Part shown: piece by piece, positions 22,705 to 29,040 of the stretch
Layout of the letters: the number at the start of each line of letters is the position of its first letter
How positions within the stretch are numbered: the first letter of the stretch is position 1
Source of the DNA: Ramazzottius varieornatus
Taxonomy: Eukaryota; Animalia; Tardigrada
Reading direction: 5' to 3'
Assembly: GCA_001949185.1 (NCBI GenBank)
Contig: BDGG01000007.1
Location: 871,556-935,555 of the forward strand
DNA length: 64,000 nucleotides
The notes under the pieces: model-generated
The model's database searches: none
Told to the model about the DNA's origin: nothing
What the model saw: only the letters and a program-made list of their open reading frames with translations
Program-made: the position numbers and the translations under genes

Positions 22705-23905
22705 GGTGAAGGTGAGCAGATGGTGAACGATCCGCCCAATGTTCGTTTAGATACTCAGCAGGAAGATTCCAGGGTGGAAAGAGTCCAAAAAAATTCCCGC
22801 CATACAGCTCATGATCATGCCCAGACAACGGAGACTGGGCAAGAGAATTTCCAGTAAGCAAGCCTGGTTCCAGCGAAAACACTGTAGTCAATCAGGATTC
22901 GAAAGTGGGCCAATGATTCAGCTGGAATATCAGCATTGACTGAAGGAAAAGAACAACACGTTAACTTGGGGCACGTTTAATGAGGCGGCGAATGATTAGT
23001 GTATATTCACTCTACTGTCTTAGAGGTGTGAAAAGAATAACCAGCTAACATGATTCGAACTTTGTAAAAGTTGTAGCTACAAGATTTTAATGAAGCGTCA
23101 CTGATGAGCGCTCTTGCATACCTGGAGTAAAAATACGCTGCACTGCTTGTAGGCACGTTCTTACTTCGTAGTGCACCTTTGGCCTGGCCCTTCTTCCTTT
23201 TGTACAATTCTTCTCCCTCCTGTGGATTTTAATAGCCTATATCAAGCTGTTTTGATCATTTCGGCCTCTCGAAAGCATGCGAGAAGTGGATGAAGGCAAA
23301 CAGTAACAGGTGATAAACGGCGCATGTCCGAGTTATCGATCCAAGGCTGTTTGAATGGGCACTGGCCAGCCAGCCGATCGTATGTCTTGTGTACAAAGAT
23401 TCATCATGTCATGCTATATTAATATGTCGACTTCAAGTGGAACGAAAGGAACGGAACGGACATCATACCGTCGTCCGCCTTATTTATTACAATCCACCAA
23501 TCAACTGGGTATAAGTGTGCCGTTTTGCAATGGGTTGCGCCGCGCCGAAATGACCGGAATTCCCCTTCACGGAAGTTGGCACAAGTAATACGCAACGACT
23601 TTTACAATCTTATCGAGGAACGAAGCCGAAAGATTTGATATGGTTGTACTGCCCCATAAAGCTCTGATTTCTTCGCAGGGTCGTCAGGATACCTTACGCA
23701 ACTATGTTTATTCACCGTTCATATCTTATTGAAAATGATATGGCCATTGTTGAACGAATTTCCATTTCAAGGTCGGTTTATGATGGCGAATATCGAAGGA
23801 AGGGTTTGTCACCGTCAATTACCACACTGCGGATCGCTCCTTTCCTCCATCAACCGCAGACAAGACGAAACGAAATCCCTTTTGACCCGGAAAGTTGCTT
23901 GAAAA

Positions 23906-26900
23906 ATGGAGATGTTTTCTTCGCTTTTTTTTCTGACCTCCCTTTTTCTGTTCAGCAACGCGGAAACTTTTCGCAACCCAATTAAGGTACGTTGTACTCA
24001 CGATCAAGTTCCAGGTCCGTCCAGCAGTAATTCTTATTTAGGATGGCGACGCACCTGACCCATGGATTCTCCGGTACAATGGAGCATACCTCCTGTCTCA
24101 TACCGGATGTAAGTTGTAGTCCGGAAGGGAGGTATTCGACCAGCCAGCCAATTGGTAGTATGAAGACTAACTCATTGCTGTTCCTGCAGATGACGAAGTC
24201 GTTGTCTATCAGAGTGACAGAGCCGACAACTGGCGAGGAGCCGCTTCGGTGACTGCATGGCGACCCCTTCCCGCGTTCAACGATTTCACCGAAGTGTGGG
24301 CCCCGGAAATCCACTTTATCCGTGGGAACTTGTACATATACTTCACGGCTAATCCTCACAGCAACTACTCGTTCAGTTCCAACGGCCACCGAATGTTCGC
24401 CTTGCAAGCAGATGATCCATCCAATCCGCTGGGGACATGGACATTCCGAGGTAGAATCTTCGATCCAAGAAAAGATATCTGGGCGATCGATGGCACTATT
24501 CTCCAGCATCAAAGCGGGAAACTCTATTTCATCTGGGTTGGAGGATTTGTAAGTAACCTTTATGACTGGGTTTAAATGCCCCAAAAAACACAAATCAACA
24601 TATTTTCGTCGAAGGAGTTCGACGGATTGACCACCTATATTTCCGAGATGGGCGATCCTCTGACCGTAGTGCCCGGTTCCACTATCTTACTGAACAGAGC
24701 TACGCTGCCATGGGAGACCCAAGACGGGAATGTGTCAGAAGGTCCAGCGGTGATAGACAGCGGAGACAACTATTACGTGGTCTACTCCGGAACCAGTACT
24801 TGGTCGGATAACTACAACCTGGGAATGCTGCGTATCAACAAGACCAAGGACCCCATGGTGATCGGGAACTGGTACAAGAACCCGGAGCCGGTGTTTGTTA
24901 AGAACGTCACCGAAGGCGTCTACGGTCCTGGGCATGCTTCGTTCACAGTGTCACCAGATGGTACTGAACACTGGATGGTGTACCATGCGATGAACAAAAC
25001 CGTAAGTCCACAAGTACAGGGTGCAGTTGTGATGTACCATTAAAACAATTTGCTTCGTAGTACGCGGATGGCAACTGGCGGCAAGCTCGAATACAAAAAA
25101 TGTCCGTGGACAGTCAGGGAGTTCCCGTTTTCCCCGAAGCCGTTGGCTTCAACCGAGAACTGGAAGTGCCATCTGGCTCGCCGAAGATGTTCCGTAACCC
25201 TATTCTGGTAATCAAAATCTCACACTCCAAATTTCAGCAGCACGAAATATTGTAGAAACTCGTGTCATTAGCTTCATGTCAGATTCCATATATTTCAGGA
25301 CCGAGATGCACCAGATCCGTGGATTCTGCGGTATAACAACACCTACCTGATGACTTTCACCATGCGTGAGTTAGCCTGATTAAATATTCGTGGAAGGTGT
25401 GTTATATTTTTATTCGCTGATTTTTCGCAGACGACTGTATTGTCATATATCAAAGTGATAAGCTGGAAGACTGGAGAAACGCAACGACTGCCACCATTTA
25501 CACGCCTCCACCAAACATGTACTACGAGTTGTGGGCTCCAGAGATCCATCTGATCAGGGGCAACCTTTACATTTACTACACGGCTACCACAAACCGCAGC
25601 GGTACCGAGGGTCACCGCATGTACGTCCTGCGATGCAATGATGCCAGAAACCCTTTGGGGAACTGGACCTTCGAAGGCAAAATTCTCGATCCCATCTGCG
25701 ATTGGTGGGCCATTGATGGAACGGTCTTACAACACGTCAATGGCAAAATGTACTTTATTTGGGCTGGTCGATGGGTAAGCTAAACGTAGGCTCACAGAAT
25801 GAGACCCAACTTGGGAAGCCGGCAAAGGCAACGTACAAGATCGGTATATCAAGTGGCGCACATTTCCATTATTGTTAGCTATTGATAGAATTATGCGCCC
25901 CTTCGGACAATGCTCTTGTACGTTCCGTTTGTCGGTCTCCCAATTCTTAACATTTCCCCATTTGACATTTTGCACAATCATCTTTATAGCCAGCAGCCCG
26001 TTACCGCGGTTTGAATATGTATTAATCTCGATCTTAGATATTTCTCGTTAGAATGTTCATATTCTTACTCGGTCGAATACCTCATGGCTGATCCTCGCTT
26101 ACAGTGTCCATGTGGCAAACCAAGGTTGTTGGTCTGTGCAAACTCGAAATAAAGTTTGATTCATCGTTACAGGAATACGCGGACTGGACGACTGACCACC
26201 TTCTGCAATTGCTCATCGCCGAAATGAGCGATCCGTTGACCATCATTCGCGGGTCGACCCGTTTGTTGAACAGACCAGCTTTGGACTGGGAAATGCATGG
26301 CGATGAGGTGCATTACGGCGTGTCTGAAGGCCCGGCGGTCATCGAAACTGAAAATTATTATCACGTCCCGTACTCTGGATCTTCAACATGGACGAACAAC
26401 TACGCACTGGGTATGCTGACTATCAACAAGTCTGCGGACCCGATGATCGCAACAAATTGGAATAAAGCTCAGCGTCCAGTTTTCGTGACAAATGAGGCAG
26501 AGAGCGTCTTCGGGCCTGGTCACGCTTCGTTTACAGTTTCGCCTGACGGGACGGAACACTGGATGGTGTACCATGCAATGGACCGAATGGTATAGAACTT
26601 CCTGATGAACTCAGTTGATACTGTATACGTAGTGCTACCAGATTATCGCGCACTCAACCACGTGAACAGTAAATGATGCCCTGGTGAGAGCCGGAAAGGC
26701 CAGACTGAAAACATCTGATCAAACTGGGCAACGACGACTCATCACGTGGCTGAGTGCGCGATAATTTGGTGGCACTACAGTACTTATCACCTCATATGGG
26801 AAGTGGAATAATGAGCCGAACCAGATTGTTGTTATTAGCTGAGTGCGCGCGCCACATGAATTAGCATCTGGTTCACAGCGTTTTCTATCTGTTTATGTTT

Positions 26901-27298
26901 TGCAGTACCAAGAAGGAAATGAGAGATATCCCAGAATTCAACGTTTCACCATAGGCAAAGATGAATTCCCAGTGTTCCCCAGTCAAGCTGCTGGTTTCGC
27001 TCGAGACCTGGCTGTTCCTTCCAATTCGTCCCGGGATTCTACCAGCACATCCGCGACGATGACGACAGTGACGCTGCCATCAGTCGCTCCACCATCATCC
27101 ACCCGATTTCCCACTTCGCAAACACCATTGGCAGTCACATCCACTCCCCGACCCTCGAACCAGGAAACAACAACGCCGATCGCGACCAGCACACCCACGT
27201 CATCTTCCAGCCGTTCGACTACACCATCATTTGCAACATGCTCTACCGGTGGGATAATTCTACTGTTTTCTTCGATTACTCTACTCTGGGTGTCGTAA
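23906..27298 (+). CDS. Secreted, probably GPI-anchored protein with two tandem GH43 (arabinofuranosidase/xylosidase-like) domains; 9 exons, about 753 aa
   Basis: Exons 23906-23986, 24042-24108, 24190-24548, 24615-25001, 25061-25207, 25299-25365, 25431-25774, 26173-26589 and 26906-27298 splice in frame. Signal peptide MEMFSSLFFLTSLFLFSNA. Each domain has FRNPI..APDPW, WAPEIH, AIDGT, SEGP, GPGHASFT and VYHA. A Ser/Thr stalk and a hydrophobic C-terminus follow. Confidence 0.9.
25811..25943. mobile_element. Hairpin MITE-like element, family A (GH43 intron)
   Basis: CCGGCAAAGGCAACGTACAAGA ... TCTTGTACGTTCCGTTTGTCGG arms around AAGTGGCGCAC ... ATGCGCC. Confidence 0.7.
26619..26782. mobile_element. 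MITE-like inverted-repeat element with TACTGTA/TACAGTA ends (GH43 intron)
   Basis: TAGTGCTACCAGATTATCGCGCACTCAACCACGTGA pairs with TCACGTGGCTGAGTGCGCGATAATTTGGTGGCACTA (3 mismatches in 36). Confidence 0.8.
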
Positions 27299-27585
27299 AA
27301 TTGTCCGCCTGCAAGTGATTCGTAAGGCGAGATCTTTCATTTTGGTTGGATGGGAAGGAATCAGGGAAGTTGTTAGATCAGAGAATTTTGGTGCAAAGTA
27401 CCTGTTACTCATTCTGTCGCTTGATAAATGTGTTTAGAAGAAAGTAAAACTGTAGCTGTGAAGATCACATTCGAAAATGGAAACTCTCAAGATGGCTTCA
27501 AAACGACTCTGCGCAGCTGGAGTGACTTCAGGAAGACACACGTCCACAAATCAAGCAACAAGTAAGAACAGACACAAAACAGAAA

Positions 27586-29040
27586 TCACCGAGATTTTCT
27601 TTCTTTTAAGTTCATCAAATCTCCCTTAATCGAACCCAAGCTGTTCCCCGCCAAGCAGTCCGGACAATACCAGGCTCGTTGTCTGATCCGTTCGACGTTC
27701 TTGATCCTGACACATTCAGCGTGGAACCATTCGGTCTTGCAGCGCTTCCCATTATCGCAGGCAATCATTACTCTTCCGCCATTCCGCTGTCCGCAGAAGC
27801 AGTACTGTTTGTCCTCGTCCTCTTCGTCCTCGAATGTATGCGAGCTCGCCGGTATGGCTCGTTTGTAGCGACCAGAAGTTGTGGTAGGTACGAGGAATGG
27901 ACTGTCGGAAGTGGGAACCGTTACTCGTTGAAGAAAACGGTCTCGACGGTTGGCCAGAGGAGACGTCTGCACAATTCCATCCACCTCCTTTTCAGACTGC
28001 AACATCTCTTCGACCTCAGGATATAAGATACCCACAGCTGACGTTCCACTCGGAGCCAGTGCAATGTTGGAAGACGAGGCTTCACTGCAGGAAAGGAGTA
28101 GTCAATCAAGACCCAATTACCAATCAGGTGAATCAACTGTAATCCGCAGTGACGTCACAACACTTTTGCTGTGCGCGTGTTTAGCAAGTATATCGATCAA
28201 CAAATCAATCGAGCATATTCATTCACAGTTTGCTTCTACGACGCCGGTTCCGTCGGTTCCCGCTCAGTGTGCGGAACGGATGGAACGCCGAAAACCAAAA
28301 CATTCGATGACGTGGCAGTTTCGAATCCAAGTTTTGATTGTTCGATTGGGACTTCCACGACGTTAGCCCAGTGTTAGCCATGTAAACATTCCGTGCTACT
28401 CAGCATGGCTCGCCATATCGTGGTAAAACCCGAAATGGTTCGGATTGATGAGATTCAATCGAGGTACCGGAATGTTTACCTGCCGAACACTGCGTTGGCT
28501 CGCTCAGAACCGGAAGCAGACAAGCAGTACTTCCAGGGTTTTCTACCATGAACACAGCAGGAACTTTCATCTGACTTACCACGAATGGGGAACATCGAAA
28601 TCCACAGAGGTTGGAGGTTTGAGATGGCCAGTCATTTCTTCCAGAGCGCGAGTTTCCAACTTGATTGTGCAACCTGGATTATCCGCTTCGATTTCCATCT
28701 TGAACTTGTCCGTGTCACCTTCCAGCCTGGTGTTGAAGCGCTGCATCACCTGCTCGAGAGTCCAGACTGTTCTTAGCTTATCGACGCCCAGCTGCACAAC
28801 TTTGTTGAGCTCTTCCTCGACCTCAGCGGTCATTTGGACTGCTTTGTCATCCGTCTCCGCGTCGTCCGACTTGCCTCGCTCGCGCTTCATCTTGGCTAGT
28901 TCTACCGTAAGTCTCTTGGCATGATCCTGACGGTTGTTCAGCTCTAAATCAAGAGTTCGGATCTTCGTCAGGCTGTCCCTAAAAATCTGTGGGAGCTCGT
29001 CGGTGTACTGCAGAAAATCCTCCAGGTACATTAGCGACAT
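27586..29040 (-). CDS. ING3: Inhibitor of growth family PHD-finger protein (ING3-like)
   Basis: N-terminal MYLEDFLQYTDELP...KFKMEIEADNPGCT (compare ING3 KFKMELEADNAGIT) and C-terminal PHD YCFC...MIACDN...EWFHAECV...WYCPDC. Confidence 0.82.

What the first reader, a model, noticed from the sequence alone, without database searches (positions are those of the whole stretch)
23906..27298. Domesticated microbial-type GH43 rebuilt as a secreted, double-domain, probably GPI-anchored animal enzyme
Seen: a spliced 753-aa frame with a signal peptide, two complete GH43 domains, a Ser/Thr-rich stalk and a terminal hydrophobic tail. Each domain keeps the three catalytic acids (D in APDPW, D in AIDGT, E in SEGP). 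It is flanked by ordinary metazoan genes (uif-like, ING3). Known: GH43 arabinofuranosidases/xylosidases are mainly bacterial and fungal, and in animals occur mostly through horizontal transfer (e.g. plant-parasitic nematodes, bdelloid rotifers). Inference: an old HGT converted into a cell-surface enzyme, perhaps on the gut, for digesting algal, moss or microbial arabinose/xylose glycans. The two-domain + mucin stalk + GPI design recalls animal brush-border glycosidases.
Basis: partly seen in the sequence, partly recalled or inferred. Interest (0 to 1): 0.85.

Follow-up and report, generated by a model that had tools for sequence, protein, structure and literature searches.

The report
Tandem GH43 arabinofuranosidase gene in tardigrade
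A water-bear gene of bacterial ancestry encodes two copies of a plant-sugar-cutting enzyme on a sugar-coated stalk that probably ends in a lipid anchor; the transfer was already catalogued, but this cell-surface design had not been described.

Summary
Window 23906-27298 (+) carries a nine-coding-exon, all GT-AG gene. Its 753-aa product is identical to GenBank 'hypothetical protein RvY_12162' of Ramazzottius varieornatus. Spliced contigs from four studies show all eight coding introns and one mRNA spanning both domains.

- **Domains:** both halves are complete GH43 five-bladed propellers. Their nearest relatives by sequence and fold are subfamily-26 exo-alpha-1,5-L-arabinofuranosidases. Both keep the Asp/Asp/Glu triad.
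- **Internal duplication:** D1 and D2 are each other's sisters (100/100) and share intron positions and phases, so the duplication followed intron gain.
- **Origin:** the tardigrade genes sit in an animal clade with springtails and sciarid flies. That clade is sister to agaricomycete fungi plus an amoebozoan, and the whole eukaryote clade is nested in Bacillota (Paenibacillus-like) sequences.
- **Host context:** the flanking genes are metazoan.

The horizontal-transfer status is not new. RvY_12162 is in an HGT orthogroup in Yoshida 2017, and the animal clade and its activity were published in 2022.

Not found described in the literature searched: the tandem propellers, the 77-aa Ser/Thr/Pro stalk and the GPI-type C-terminal signal. 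GPI anchoring, gut location and substrate remain inference.

Other springtail, sciarid and bacterial tandem GH43 proteins arose independently.

The parts
23906..23986 (+). Coding exon 1: start codon, signal peptide (residues 1-19, 23906-23962) and start of the mature protein (ETFRNPIK)
   Evidence: The exon-intron junction is confirmed by spliced contigs in 4 runs.
24042..24108 (+). Coding exon 2 (67 nt, ends in phase 1): domain 1 APDPW motif with the predicted catalytic base Asp33 (24057-24059)
24190..24548 (+). Coding exon 3: domain 1 middle blades, with the pKa-modulator Asp150 (24489-24491)
   Evidence: Pfam GH43 E 1.5e-18
24615..25001 (+). Coding exon 4: domain 1 later blades, with the general acid Glu211 (24738-24740)
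   Evidence: Pfam GH43 E 7.9e-19; PDB matches to GH43_26 enzymes
25061..25207 (+). Coding exon 5: end of domain 1, short linker and start of domain 2 (FRNPIL)
25299..25365 (+). Coding exon 6 (67 nt, phase 1, twin of exon 2): domain 2 APDPW motif with Asp353 (25314-25316)
   Evidence: It aligns to SaAraf43A Asp20.
25431..25774 (+). Coding exon 7: domain 2 middle blades, with Asp465 (25715-25717)
   Evidence: Pfam GH43 E 2.2e-20. It aligns to SaAraf43A Asp135.
26173..26589 (+). Coding exon 8: domain 2 later blades, with Glu536 (26326-26328)
   Evidence: Pfam GH43 E 6.6e-17. It aligns to SaAraf43A Glu196.
26906..27298 (+). Coding exon 9: end of domain 2; Ser/Thr/Pro stalk (residues 661-737, 27017-27247); hydrophobic tail with candidate GPI signal (residues 738-753, 27248-27295); stop codon 27296-27298
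   Evidence: No Pfam match. AlphaFold pLDDT is about 30 from residue 668.
27299..27487 (+). 3' UTR. Transcript contigs end at 27444, 27463 and 27487. A GATAAA lies at 27423-27428.
23768..23905 (+). 5' UTR (proximal part). Contigs begin at 23768, 23802 or 23855. Further upstream non-coding sequence is joined in some contigs.
   Evidence: table 8 and joints
26629..26778 (.). Palindromic MITE-like repeat inserted in intron 8. It is not part of the protein, but it explains why intron 8 is 316 nt while its twin, intron 4, is 59 nt.
   Evidence: Inverted arms of 53 nt, 81% complementary. At least 40 copies at 85-90% identity across the genome.

Best explanation
RvY_12162 is a host-integrated descendant of a bacterial-type GH43 subfamily-26 exo-alpha-L-arabinofuranosidase.

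**History after integration.** In the tardigrade lineage the gene first acquired spliceosomal introns. The whole catalytic module, introns included, was then duplicated in tandem inside the gene. A Ser/Thr/Pro-rich stalk and a C-terminal hydrophobic signal are attached after the second module.

**Predicted fate of the protein.** It enters the secretory pathway, with the signal peptide cut after Ala19. It is N- and O-glycosylated. Its last roughly 22 residues are most likely exchanged for a GPI anchor, with the best omega candidate at Ser731. That would leave two active five-bladed propellers held above the outer face of the plasma membrane.

**Predicted chemistry.** Each propeller should remove terminal alpha-1,5-linked L-arabinofuranose from arabino-oligosaccharides or arabinan by the inverting GH43 mechanism. 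The residues are Asp33/Asp353 as base, Asp150/Asp465 as pKa modulator, and Glu211/Glu536 as acid.

**Shown:** gene structure, a single spliced mRNA, two intact GH43_26-like domains, phylogenetic position, duplication after intron gain.

**Inferred:** enzymatic specificity, glycosylation, GPI anchoring, tissue and dietary role.
For: - **Gene model and identity.** The gene model and its identity to RvY_12162 come.
- **Transcription.** All eight introns and one contig across both domains appear in 4 runs from 4 studies.
- **GH43 assignment.**
- **Nearest solved relatives.** These are SaAraf43A (3akf), AtAbf43C (9nxg/9nxj), 5m8b, 5m8e and 3k1u.
- **Triad mapping.** The D2 triad aligns to SaAraf43A D20, D135 and E196, which mutagenesis has verified (PMC12493170).
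- **Structure.** The AlphaFold model has mean pLDDT 83.5. The top 10 Foldseek PDB hits are all from this group of arabinofuranosidase-type GH43 structures, at TM 0.87-0.90 for the single-domain chains.
- **Conservation.** Of the columns invariant in 40 single-domain relatives, every one is kept in both domains except one Ala to Ser change in D1.
- **Careful tree.** D1+D2 100/100; tardigrade clade 99/97; animals 95/90; eukaryote clade 99/97; bacterial sister group 93/94.
- **Named bacterial genomes.** The eukaryote clade is nested in a Bacillota-dominated set.
- **Introns.** Positions and phases are shared by D1, D2 and the paralog RvY_16399.
- **Stalk, tail and omega candidates** come.
- **GPI machinery.** Gaa1, PIG-T and C13 peptidase genes are present in the genome.
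- **Family activity.** The Folsomia clade member hydrolyses pNP-alpha-L-arabinofuranoside (PMC9460274). [quoted passage not shown]
Against: - No activity, localisation or anchoring data exist for this protein.
- No GPI or signal-peptide predictor could be run. The hydrophobic tail is short (about 14 residues, with two Ser inside), so the call rests on inspection.
- D1 has lost 22 and D2 13 of 82 family-conserved positions. Altered specificity, or one weaker domain, cannot be excluded.
- CAZy subfamily assignment by dbCAN was not possible.
- Architecture conservation in other tardigrades could not be verified. Only two short exon-like fragments from unnamed ENA contigs were seen, and H. dujardini shows only a single-domain relative.
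Confidence: 0.65

Rival explanations
1. The architecture is the same but the protein is not GPI-anchored. The C-terminal hydrophobic stretch would be a tail-less type I membrane anchor, or it would be clipped off so that the enzyme is a soluble, heavily O-glycosylated secreted (for example gut-lumen or salivary) glycosidase.
For: The tail is only about 14 hydrophobic residues, interrupted by Ser-Ser and Thr. No predictor was run. All other clade members examined except one sciarid protein end right after the catalytic domain, so they are presumably soluble.
Against: The tail ends the protein with no cytoplasmic residues and is too short for a stable membrane span. It is preceded by small residues (S731-F-A, A733, C735) and a 4-6 residue polar spacer, which is the classical GPI signal layout. 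The transamidase subunits are encoded in the genome.
Confidence: 0.25
2. The animal genes came from another eukaryote, for example a fungus, or moved between soil eukaryotes, rather than directly from a bacterium into a panarthropod ancestor.
For: The animal clade's immediate sister is a clade of agaricomycete fungi plus Planoprotostelium, inside one eukaryote clade (99/97). Sciarid-fly sequences are scattered among springtail sequences instead of forming their own group. The distribution in animals is very patchy.
Against: Animals and fungi are reciprocally monophyletic in the trees (95/90 and 100/99). Animals are therefore not nested inside fungi. Tardigrades versus arthropods follows the species tree. 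The whole eukaryote clade is nested among Bacillota sequences. The direction of any eukaryote-to-eukaryote step cannot be read from an unrooted subtree.
Confidence: 0.3
3. One or both propellers no longer act as arabinofuranosidases. They would have a different specificity (for example beta-xylosidase or galactofuranosidase) or serve as a carbohydrate-binding module, replacing the CBM42 that bacterial relatives carry.
For: D1 differs at 22 and D2 at 13 of 82 family-conserved columns. The D1/D2 stem and end branches are long (stem 0.62; ends 0.59 and 0.34). In bacteria the partner module of this GH43 is usually a CBM.
Against: Both keep the complete triad and all but one invariant column. Alignment to SaAraf43A across blade V, which makes the exo-type pocket, has only a 1-residue indel. 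Fold matches reach TM 0.87-0.90.
Confidence: 0.15
4. Vertical inheritance: an ancient eukaryotic (amorphean) GH43 retained in a few lineages and lost almost everywhere else.
For: Fungi, an amoebozoan and animals form one clade, and the tardigrade-arthropod split follows the species tree.
Against: Among named hits the lineage was seen only in tardigrades, springtails, sciarid flies, agaricomycetes and one amoebozoan. Vertical descent would therefore require a very large number of losses. The clade is nested inside bacterial sequences at about 45% identity, the same level as between animals and fungi. Yoshida et al. classed the orthogroup as prokaryote-derived HGT.
Confidence: 0.05
5. Contaminant or assembly artefact: a microbial gene mis-assembled into the tardigrade scaffold.
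For: None beyond the microbial affinity of the domain.
Against: There are eight spliceosomal introns confirmed by spliced transcripts. A host MITE sits in intron 8. The gene has metazoan neighbours on a 2.3-Mb scaffold and the same G+C as its surroundings. Paralogs on two other scaffolds share its intron positions.
Confidence: 0.01

Closest known systems
FcAraf43 of Folsomia candida and the published 'animal GH43' clade (PMC9460274)
   Same: It belongs to the same clade of GH43 arabinofuranosidase-like genes in soil invertebrates. It has an N-terminal signal peptide, an inferred bacterial origin and the same catalytic triad. FcAraf43 was shown active on pNP-alpha-L-arabinofuranoside.
   Different: FcAraf43 is a single 343-aa domain whose 1029-bp ORF is reported to map contiguously to the genome. 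It has no stalk and no C-terminal hydrophobic signal. RvY_12162 has eight coding introns, two domains, a mucin-like stalk and a GPI-type tail.
SaAraf43A (Streptomyces avermitilis, PDB 3AKF-3AKI) and AtAbf43C (Acetivibrio thermocellus, PDB 9NXG-9NXJ), GH43 subfamily 26 exo-alpha-1,5-L-arabinofuranosidases
   Same: The five-bladed propeller is shared. The triad aligns residue for residue, and blade V aligns with only a 1-residue indel. These are the best sequence and fold matches.
   Different: These are bacterial enzymes with one GH43 plus a CBM42, or with a dockerin. The tardigrade protein has a second GH43 in place of a CBM, plus eukaryotic targeting signals. Identity is about 31-36% in the fold alignments.
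Paralog RvY_16399 (R. varieornatus) and its ortholog OWA50136.1 (H. dujardini, annotated exo-alpha-(1->5)-L-arabinofuranosidase)
   Same: They are the sister lineage within the tardigrade clade (99/97), share intron positions and have a signal peptide.
   Different: They are single-domain. RvY_16399 ends in an approximately 80-aa Cys-rich extension without a Pfam match, not in a stalk and tail. They are about 43-48% identical to D1/D2.
Tandem GH43 proteins of Orchesella springtails (651-669 aa), Pseudolycoriella hygida (607 aa) and a Verrucomicrobiota MAG (673 aa)
   Same: They have two GH43_26-like propellers in one polypeptide, separated by a very short linker.
   Different: The trees indicate independent origins. 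Tardigrade D1/D2 are sisters. One Orchesella protein has its own sister pair. The sciarid and verrucomicrobial domains are not sisters. None has the Ser/Thr stalk. Only the sciarid protein ends in a hydrophobic stretch.
Vertebrate brush-border glycosidases (sucrase-isomaltase, maltase-glucoamylase, lactase-phlorizin hydrolase; GPI-anchored trehalase). This comparison rests on my own knowledge.
   Same: The layout is analogous: internally duplicated catalytic domains held on an O-glycosylated stalk at the cell surface.
   Different: There is no homology, because these enzymes are GH31, GH1 or GH37 rather than GH43. Sucrase-isomaltase uses an N-terminal signal anchor and lactase a C-terminal transmembrane helix. 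Localisation of the tardigrade protein is unknown.

Membership tests
Glycoside hydrolase family 43 (Pfam PF04616) | Profile match above the curated threshold | tested here: met
   Exons 3, 4, 7 and 8 each score 62-74 bits against a cut-off of 32.2. The whole protein scores 336.8 bits in two stretches.
Glycoside hydrolase family 43 (Pfam PF04616) | Five-bladed beta-propeller fold | tested here: met
   The predicted model has two all-beta domains at pLDDT mostly above 90. Foldseek TM to single-domain GH43 structures is 0.87-0.90 at rmsd 2.1-2.3 A. This is a prediction, not a solved structure.
Glycoside hydrolase family 43 (Pfam PF04616) | Asp base, Asp pKa modulator and Glu acid at the aligned positions | tested here: met
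   D353, D465 and E536 align to SaAraf43A D20, D135 and E196 (mutagenesis cited in PMC12493170). D33, D150 and E211 are the D1 equivalents.
GH43 subfamily 26 (exo-alpha-1,5-L-arabinofuranosidases) | Closest characterised relatives belong to the subfamily | tested here: met
   The top PDB sequence and fold hits are 3akf, 9nxg/9nxj, 5m8b, 5m8e and 3k1u. PMC12493170 assigns SaAraf43A and AtAbf43C to GH43_26. Subfamily membership of the other three is from my own knowledge.
GH43 subfamily 26 (exo-alpha-1,5-L-arabinofuranosidases) | CAZy/dbCAN subfamily model assignment | not testable with these tools
   No dbCAN or CAZy subfamily HMMs were available.
GH43 subfamily 26 (exo-alpha-1,5-L-arabinofuranosidases) | Deep, narrow exo-type pocket made by the extended blade-V loop | tested here: inconclusive
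   The blade-V region aligns to SaAraf43A with only a 1-residue indel. Pocket geometry was not measured on the model.
GH43 subfamily 26 (exo-alpha-1,5-L-arabinofuranosidases) | Release of terminal alpha-1,5-L-arabinofuranose from arabino-oligosaccharides | not testable with these tools
   Only indirect evidence exists: the clade member FcAraf43 is active on pNP-alpha-L-Araf (PMC9460274).
HGT-derived animal GH43 clade (springtails, sciarid flies, tardigrades) | Groups with the other animal sequences, and the group is nested in bacterial sequences | tested here: met
   Animals 95/90; eukaryote clade 99/97; bacterial sister 93/94. The clade is nested in a Bacillota-dominated set.
HGT-derived animal GH43 clade (springtails, sciarid flies, tardigrades) | True integration in the host genome | tested here: met
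   Introns, spliced mRNA, metazoan neighbours and a host repeat in intron 8.
GPI-anchored proteins | N-terminal ER signal peptide | tested here: inconclusive
   The hydrophobic core at residues 4-16 is followed by S-N-A|E, which fits the -3/-1 rule by inspection. SignalP was not available.
GPI-anchored proteins | C-terminal signal: small omega to omega+2 residues, a short polar spacer, and a hydrophobic tail that ends the protein | tested here: inconclusive
   S731-F-A, spacer TCSTGG, tail IILLFSSITLLWVS, with no residues after it. This fits by inspection only. NetGPI and PredGPI were not available.
GPI-anchored proteins | Organism has the GPI transamidase | tested here: met
   Multi-exon matches in the genome to Gaa1, Gpi16/PIG-T and Peptidase_C13.
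GPI-anchored proteins | Lipid anchor demonstrated (PI-PLC release, mass spectrometry) | not testable with these tools
   This needs an experiment.
Brush-border disaccharidases (GH31 sucrase-isomaltase type) | Homologous catalytic domains | tested here: not met
   Pfam finds only GH43. The resemblance is architectural only.

The most novel reading that the evidence does not exclude
A horizontally acquired bacterial-type arabinofuranosidase has been rebuilt in a tardigrade into a GPI-tethered, mucin-stalked, double-headed ectoenzyme, a convergent brush-border design. Both heads would be active. It would be used on the gut epithelium to strip arabinose from algal or moss pectic arabinan. The independent tandem duplications in springtails and sciarid flies, one of them with its own hydrophobic tail, would then mean that doubling the propeller is a repeatedly selected step in domesticating this enzyme in soil animals.
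Probability: 0.3. Interest if true: 0.55.

Novelty: new variant of a known kind. Interest (0 to 1): 0.4.

Why it matters
This is a clean, well-supported example of how a foreign gene is made over by an animal genome. The additions are a signal peptide, introns, an internal duplication that copied the introns, a mucin-like stalk and a probable lipid-anchor signal, and the product is expressed as one mRNA.

It adds to the catalogued tardigrade HGT list a concrete, testable hypothesis: a cell-surface arabinan-trimming enzyme.

Together with the springtail and sciarid tandem proteins, it suggests a recurrent evolutionary route for acquired glycosidases in soil fauna.

It does not change the accepted picture of limited HGT in tardigrades, and the HGT call itself is not new.

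Tried and rejected
- **Joined model never sent.** The spliced protein was never typed or sent to any search tool. Searches were made exon by exon by reference. The joined model was built only inside a script from window.fa. A homology search later returned database protein P0284, which a script showed to be identical to it. All whole-protein steps used that id.
- **The look-up of encoding contigs was closed.** The contigs carrying the ENA fragments P0001 and P0002 could not be fetched. P0001 is D1-like, 80% identical to exon 4. P0002 carries the D2-specific VHYG insertion. Conservation of the two-domain, stalk and tail design in other species therefore stays untested. P0002's position in the tree was unresolved (support 81).
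- **JGI metagenome scan with P0284.** It returned one locus at 41% identity, which is not an ortholog.
- **Exon queries with the search for homologous proteins.** These were not attempted, because the length window would exclude full-length relatives. I used the representative search with exon 4 instead, then queries with full-length relatives.
- **Literature search by accession** found nothing in main texts. Only a supplement of PMC5531438 names RvY_12162. The Hashimoto 2016 supplements are not held.
- **The search of earlier findings by words** gave nothing.
- **First large IQ-TREE run** (162 rows) did not finish and was replaced by FastTree plus smaller IQ-TREE runs. One script call returned no answer, but its tree was recovered.
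- **Contamination** was considered and rejected.
Full report
**What is there.**

Reading window 23800-27400 and splicing nine exons gives a 2262-nt ORF of 753 codons. There is no internal stop and all eight introns are GT..AG. Introns are 55-91 nt, except intron 7 (398 nt) and intron 8 (316 nt).

The genome handle is 55.8 Mb in 200 contigs. Homology searches later returned 'hypothetical protein RvY_12162 [Ramazzottius varieornatus]', 753 aa, from a 2.34-Mb contig. A script showed it is identical to my model. The gene model is therefore already in GenBank, without a functional name.

Exons were searched by reference. After, whole-protein steps used the database id P0284.

**Transcription.**

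Twenty public runs hold 0.21-0.65 of the sampled words of the 3.6-kb stretch; fifteen of them hold 0.61-0.65, which is the exonic share. Contigs of four runs from four studies were laid on 23500-27800.

Every one of the eight coding introns is skipped exactly at the predicted GT..AG borders. In each run a single contig of about 2.5 kb or more carries all of the larger exons and skips all eight introns, so both domains are on it.

The runs are only guessed to be RNA. Intron-less contigs can only come from spliced transcripts, so this guess does not weaken the result.

The transcript runs from about 23768-23855 to about 27444-27487, and a GATAAA lies at 27423.

Upstream joints suggest a further non-coding 5' exon. 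They are 23584>23679 with GT..AG ends, and 23581>23768 with non-canonical ends. I left this unresolved.

**The domains.**

Pfam GH43 matches exons 3, 4, 7 and 8 individually and matches the protein twice.

The best solved relatives by sequence are SaAraf43A (3akf), AtAbf43C (9nxg/9nxj), 5m8b, 5m8e and 3k1u.

In the alignment to SaAraf43A, D353, D465 and E536 fall on D20, D135 and E196 (chain index +1). These are the residues whose mutation abolishes activity (PMC12493170). D33, D150 and E211 are the equivalents in domain 1.

Of 82 columns conserved in at least 85% of 40 single-domain relatives, D1 keeps 60 and D2 keeps 69. Of the columns that are fully invariant, both keep every one except a single Ala to Ser change in D1.

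An AlphaFold model has mean pLDDT 83.5 and pTM 0.73. It shows two confident all-beta domains and a disordered region from residue 668.

Its top ten Foldseek PDB hits are all from this same group of arabinofuranosidase-type GH43 structures, at TM 0.87-0.90 for the single-domain chains. PMC12493170 states that all ten characterised GH43_26 enzymes act on alpha-1,5 arabino-oligosaccharides or arabinan.

**Targeting signals.**

Only two hydrophobic segments exist. The first is residues 4-16, followed by S-N-A|E, which reads as a signal peptide. The second is residues 739-752, which end the protein.

Between domain 2 and the tail lie 77 residues that are 68% Ser+Thr+Pro. There are also 11 N-X-S/T sequons.

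The tail is preceded by small residues and a short polar spacer: S731-F-A, then TCSTGG, then IILLFSSITLLWVS. This is the classical GPI-signal layout.

The genome encodes Gaa1, PIG-T and C13 peptidases. No GPI predictor was available, so anchoring is a reasoned inference. I put it at about 0.6.

**Origin.**

A search of 1.84 billion representatives with exon 4 found 904 proteins at E<=1e-10. Named relatives came from three further searches.

A careful IQ-TREE was built on domain slices: 49 rows, LG+C20+F+G4, support given as UFBoot/SH-aLRT. It gives:

- D1+D2: 100/100
- tardigrade clade (D1, D2, RvY_16399, H. dujardini OWA50136): 99/97
- that clade plus an unnamed EukProt transcript: 98/93
- animals (tardigrades plus Orchesella and Allacma springtails plus Bradysia and Pseudolycoriella sciarid flies): 95/90
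- one eukaryote clade that also holds agaricomycete fungi and Planoprotostelium: 99/97
- bacterial sister group, containing Paenibacillus sp. OAS669: 93/94

With 42 named bacterial genome loci added, the eukaryote clade stays intact (99). It lies inside a Bacillota-dominated set (96), and Bacteroidota lie outside. Quick and FastTree runs on larger samples agree.

This supports a bacterial, Paenibacillus-like ancestry. It also supports an old acquisition shared with, or exchanged among, other soil eukaryotes. The trees do not resolve whether animals got the gene directly from bacteria or via another eukaryote.

**Prior knowledge.**

The supplement of Yoshida et al. 2017 lists H. dujardini bHd09176.1 as a prokaryote-derived HGT candidate. 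It was validated there by phylogeny, expression and perdurance. Its orthogroup OG0009631 contains RvY_06493, RvY_16399.1 and RvY_12162.1, with a Glyco_hydro_43 domain.

The Folsomia candida paper (PMC9460274) described the animal GH43 clade, including 'a tardigrade'. It placed that clade next to Paenibacillus and Thermoanaerobacterium and showed pNP-alpha-L-arabinofuranosidase activity of FcAraf43.

The HGT inference is therefore known. I found no description of the tandem, stalk and tail architecture.

**History inside the tardigrade.**

D1 and D2 are 59% identical. They share all four intron positions and phases, which agrees with the scan's other note s1-808309.

Two of these positions are also exactly shared with the paralog RvY_16399. 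The other two lie within 4-5 alignment columns of its introns.

The introns therefore predate the paralog split, and the internal duplication copied a module that already contained introns.

Because RvY_16399 groups with the H. dujardini gene (100/98) and not with D1/D2, the RvY_12162 lineage seems older than the Ramazzottius-Hypsibius split. Even so, only a single-domain H. dujardini protein was found.

Short ENA fragments suggest that both domain types exist in another organism. P0001 is 80% identical to exon 4. P0002 carries the D2-specific VHYG insertion.

**Tandem GH43 elsewhere.**

Two-domain relatives occur in Orchesella (651-669 aa), Pseudolycoriella (607 aa), a Verrucomicrobiota MAG (673 aa) and unnamed metagenome fragments. 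In the trees their domain pairs have separate origins from the tardigrade pair. Tandemisation is therefore recurrent.

None of them has the Ser/Thr stalk. Only the sciarid protein ends in a hydrophobic stretch.

**Context and artefact check.**

The neighbours are metazoan. Upstream on the minus strand is a Lectin_C, LDLa, CUB, Sushi, EGF, HYR and Ephrin_rec_like giant gene. Downstream on the minus strand is an ING plus PHD gene. Beyond that lie a Sir2 gene and a WD40 gene.

G+C of the gene region (0.48) matches its surroundings. Intron 8 contains a host palindromic repeat with at least 40 genomic copies. Contamination is excluded.

**Verdict.**

GPI anchoring, gut location and substrate remain hypotheses, and xylose glycans are less likely than arabinan.

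This is a new architectural variant of an already recognised class of horizontally acquired animal glycosidases. It is of moderate interest.

Noticed in passing
window 26629-26778 (intron 8): A palindromic MITE-like element with 53-nt inverted arms (81% complementary) and a 44-nt loop. At least 40 scored copies at 85-90% identity lie across many scaffolds, out of 189 first-look candidates. RNA contigs with foreign flanks pile up here. It may relate to the palindromic element families noted by the scan just upstream of this window.
   Followed up: partly
G000:C3:191720-192588 (locus L004, about 1365-2400): A third GH43 copy, 67-75% identical to RvY_16399 and probably RvY_06493. It looks degenerate. 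The exon equivalent to the ADPW catalytic-base exon has both Trp codons turned into stops, and the frame ends shortly after GPGHAS, so the last blade is missing.
   Followed up: partly
P0168 = RvY_16399, residues about 377-457 (G000:C13 locus, L003/L007): The single-domain paralog carries an approximately 80-aa Cys-rich C-terminal extension with no Pfam match. This is a different add-on from the stalk and tail of RvY_12162. The H. dujardini ortholog lacks it.
   Followed up: no
window 23581-23772: Two alternative upstream joints appear in transcript contigs. 23584>23679 has GT..AG ends (one run). 23581>23768 has no canonical ends at any permitted shift (two runs). They could reflect a 5'-UTR intron, a strain deletion or an assembly effect. 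Unexplained.
   Followed up: partly
window 27299-27800: One run's contig continues from the GH43 3' UTR into the convergent ING/PHD gene, whose stop codon lies at 27586 on the minus strand. The two 3' ends therefore abut or overlap.
   Followed up: no
window 25934-26126 (intron 7): Short RNA contigs with loose ends at 26078 and 26109 lie inside the 398-nt intron 7, whose twin intron 3 is 66 nt. This is probably another inserted repeat.
   Followed up: no
P0285 (Pseudolycoriella hygida, 607 aa): The sciarid tandem GH43 ends in a 16-residue hydrophobic stretch followed by NLSVE. It may be a second, independent membrane-tethered tandem GH43. The gene model is N-terminally truncated.
   Followed up: no
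trees: Sciarid-fly GH43 sequences are scattered among springtail paralog groups rather than forming one dipteran clade. This means either ancient paralogy with loss or transfer between soil arthropods. Agaricomycete fungi plus Planoprotostelium form the sister of the animal clade, which the 2022 paper did not report.
   Followed up: partly
P0292 (Orchesella cincta, 561 aa): A GH43 domain is followed by a Janus/Ocnus domain (PF05005, E 2e-30). This is either a real fusion or two merged gene models.
   Followed up: no
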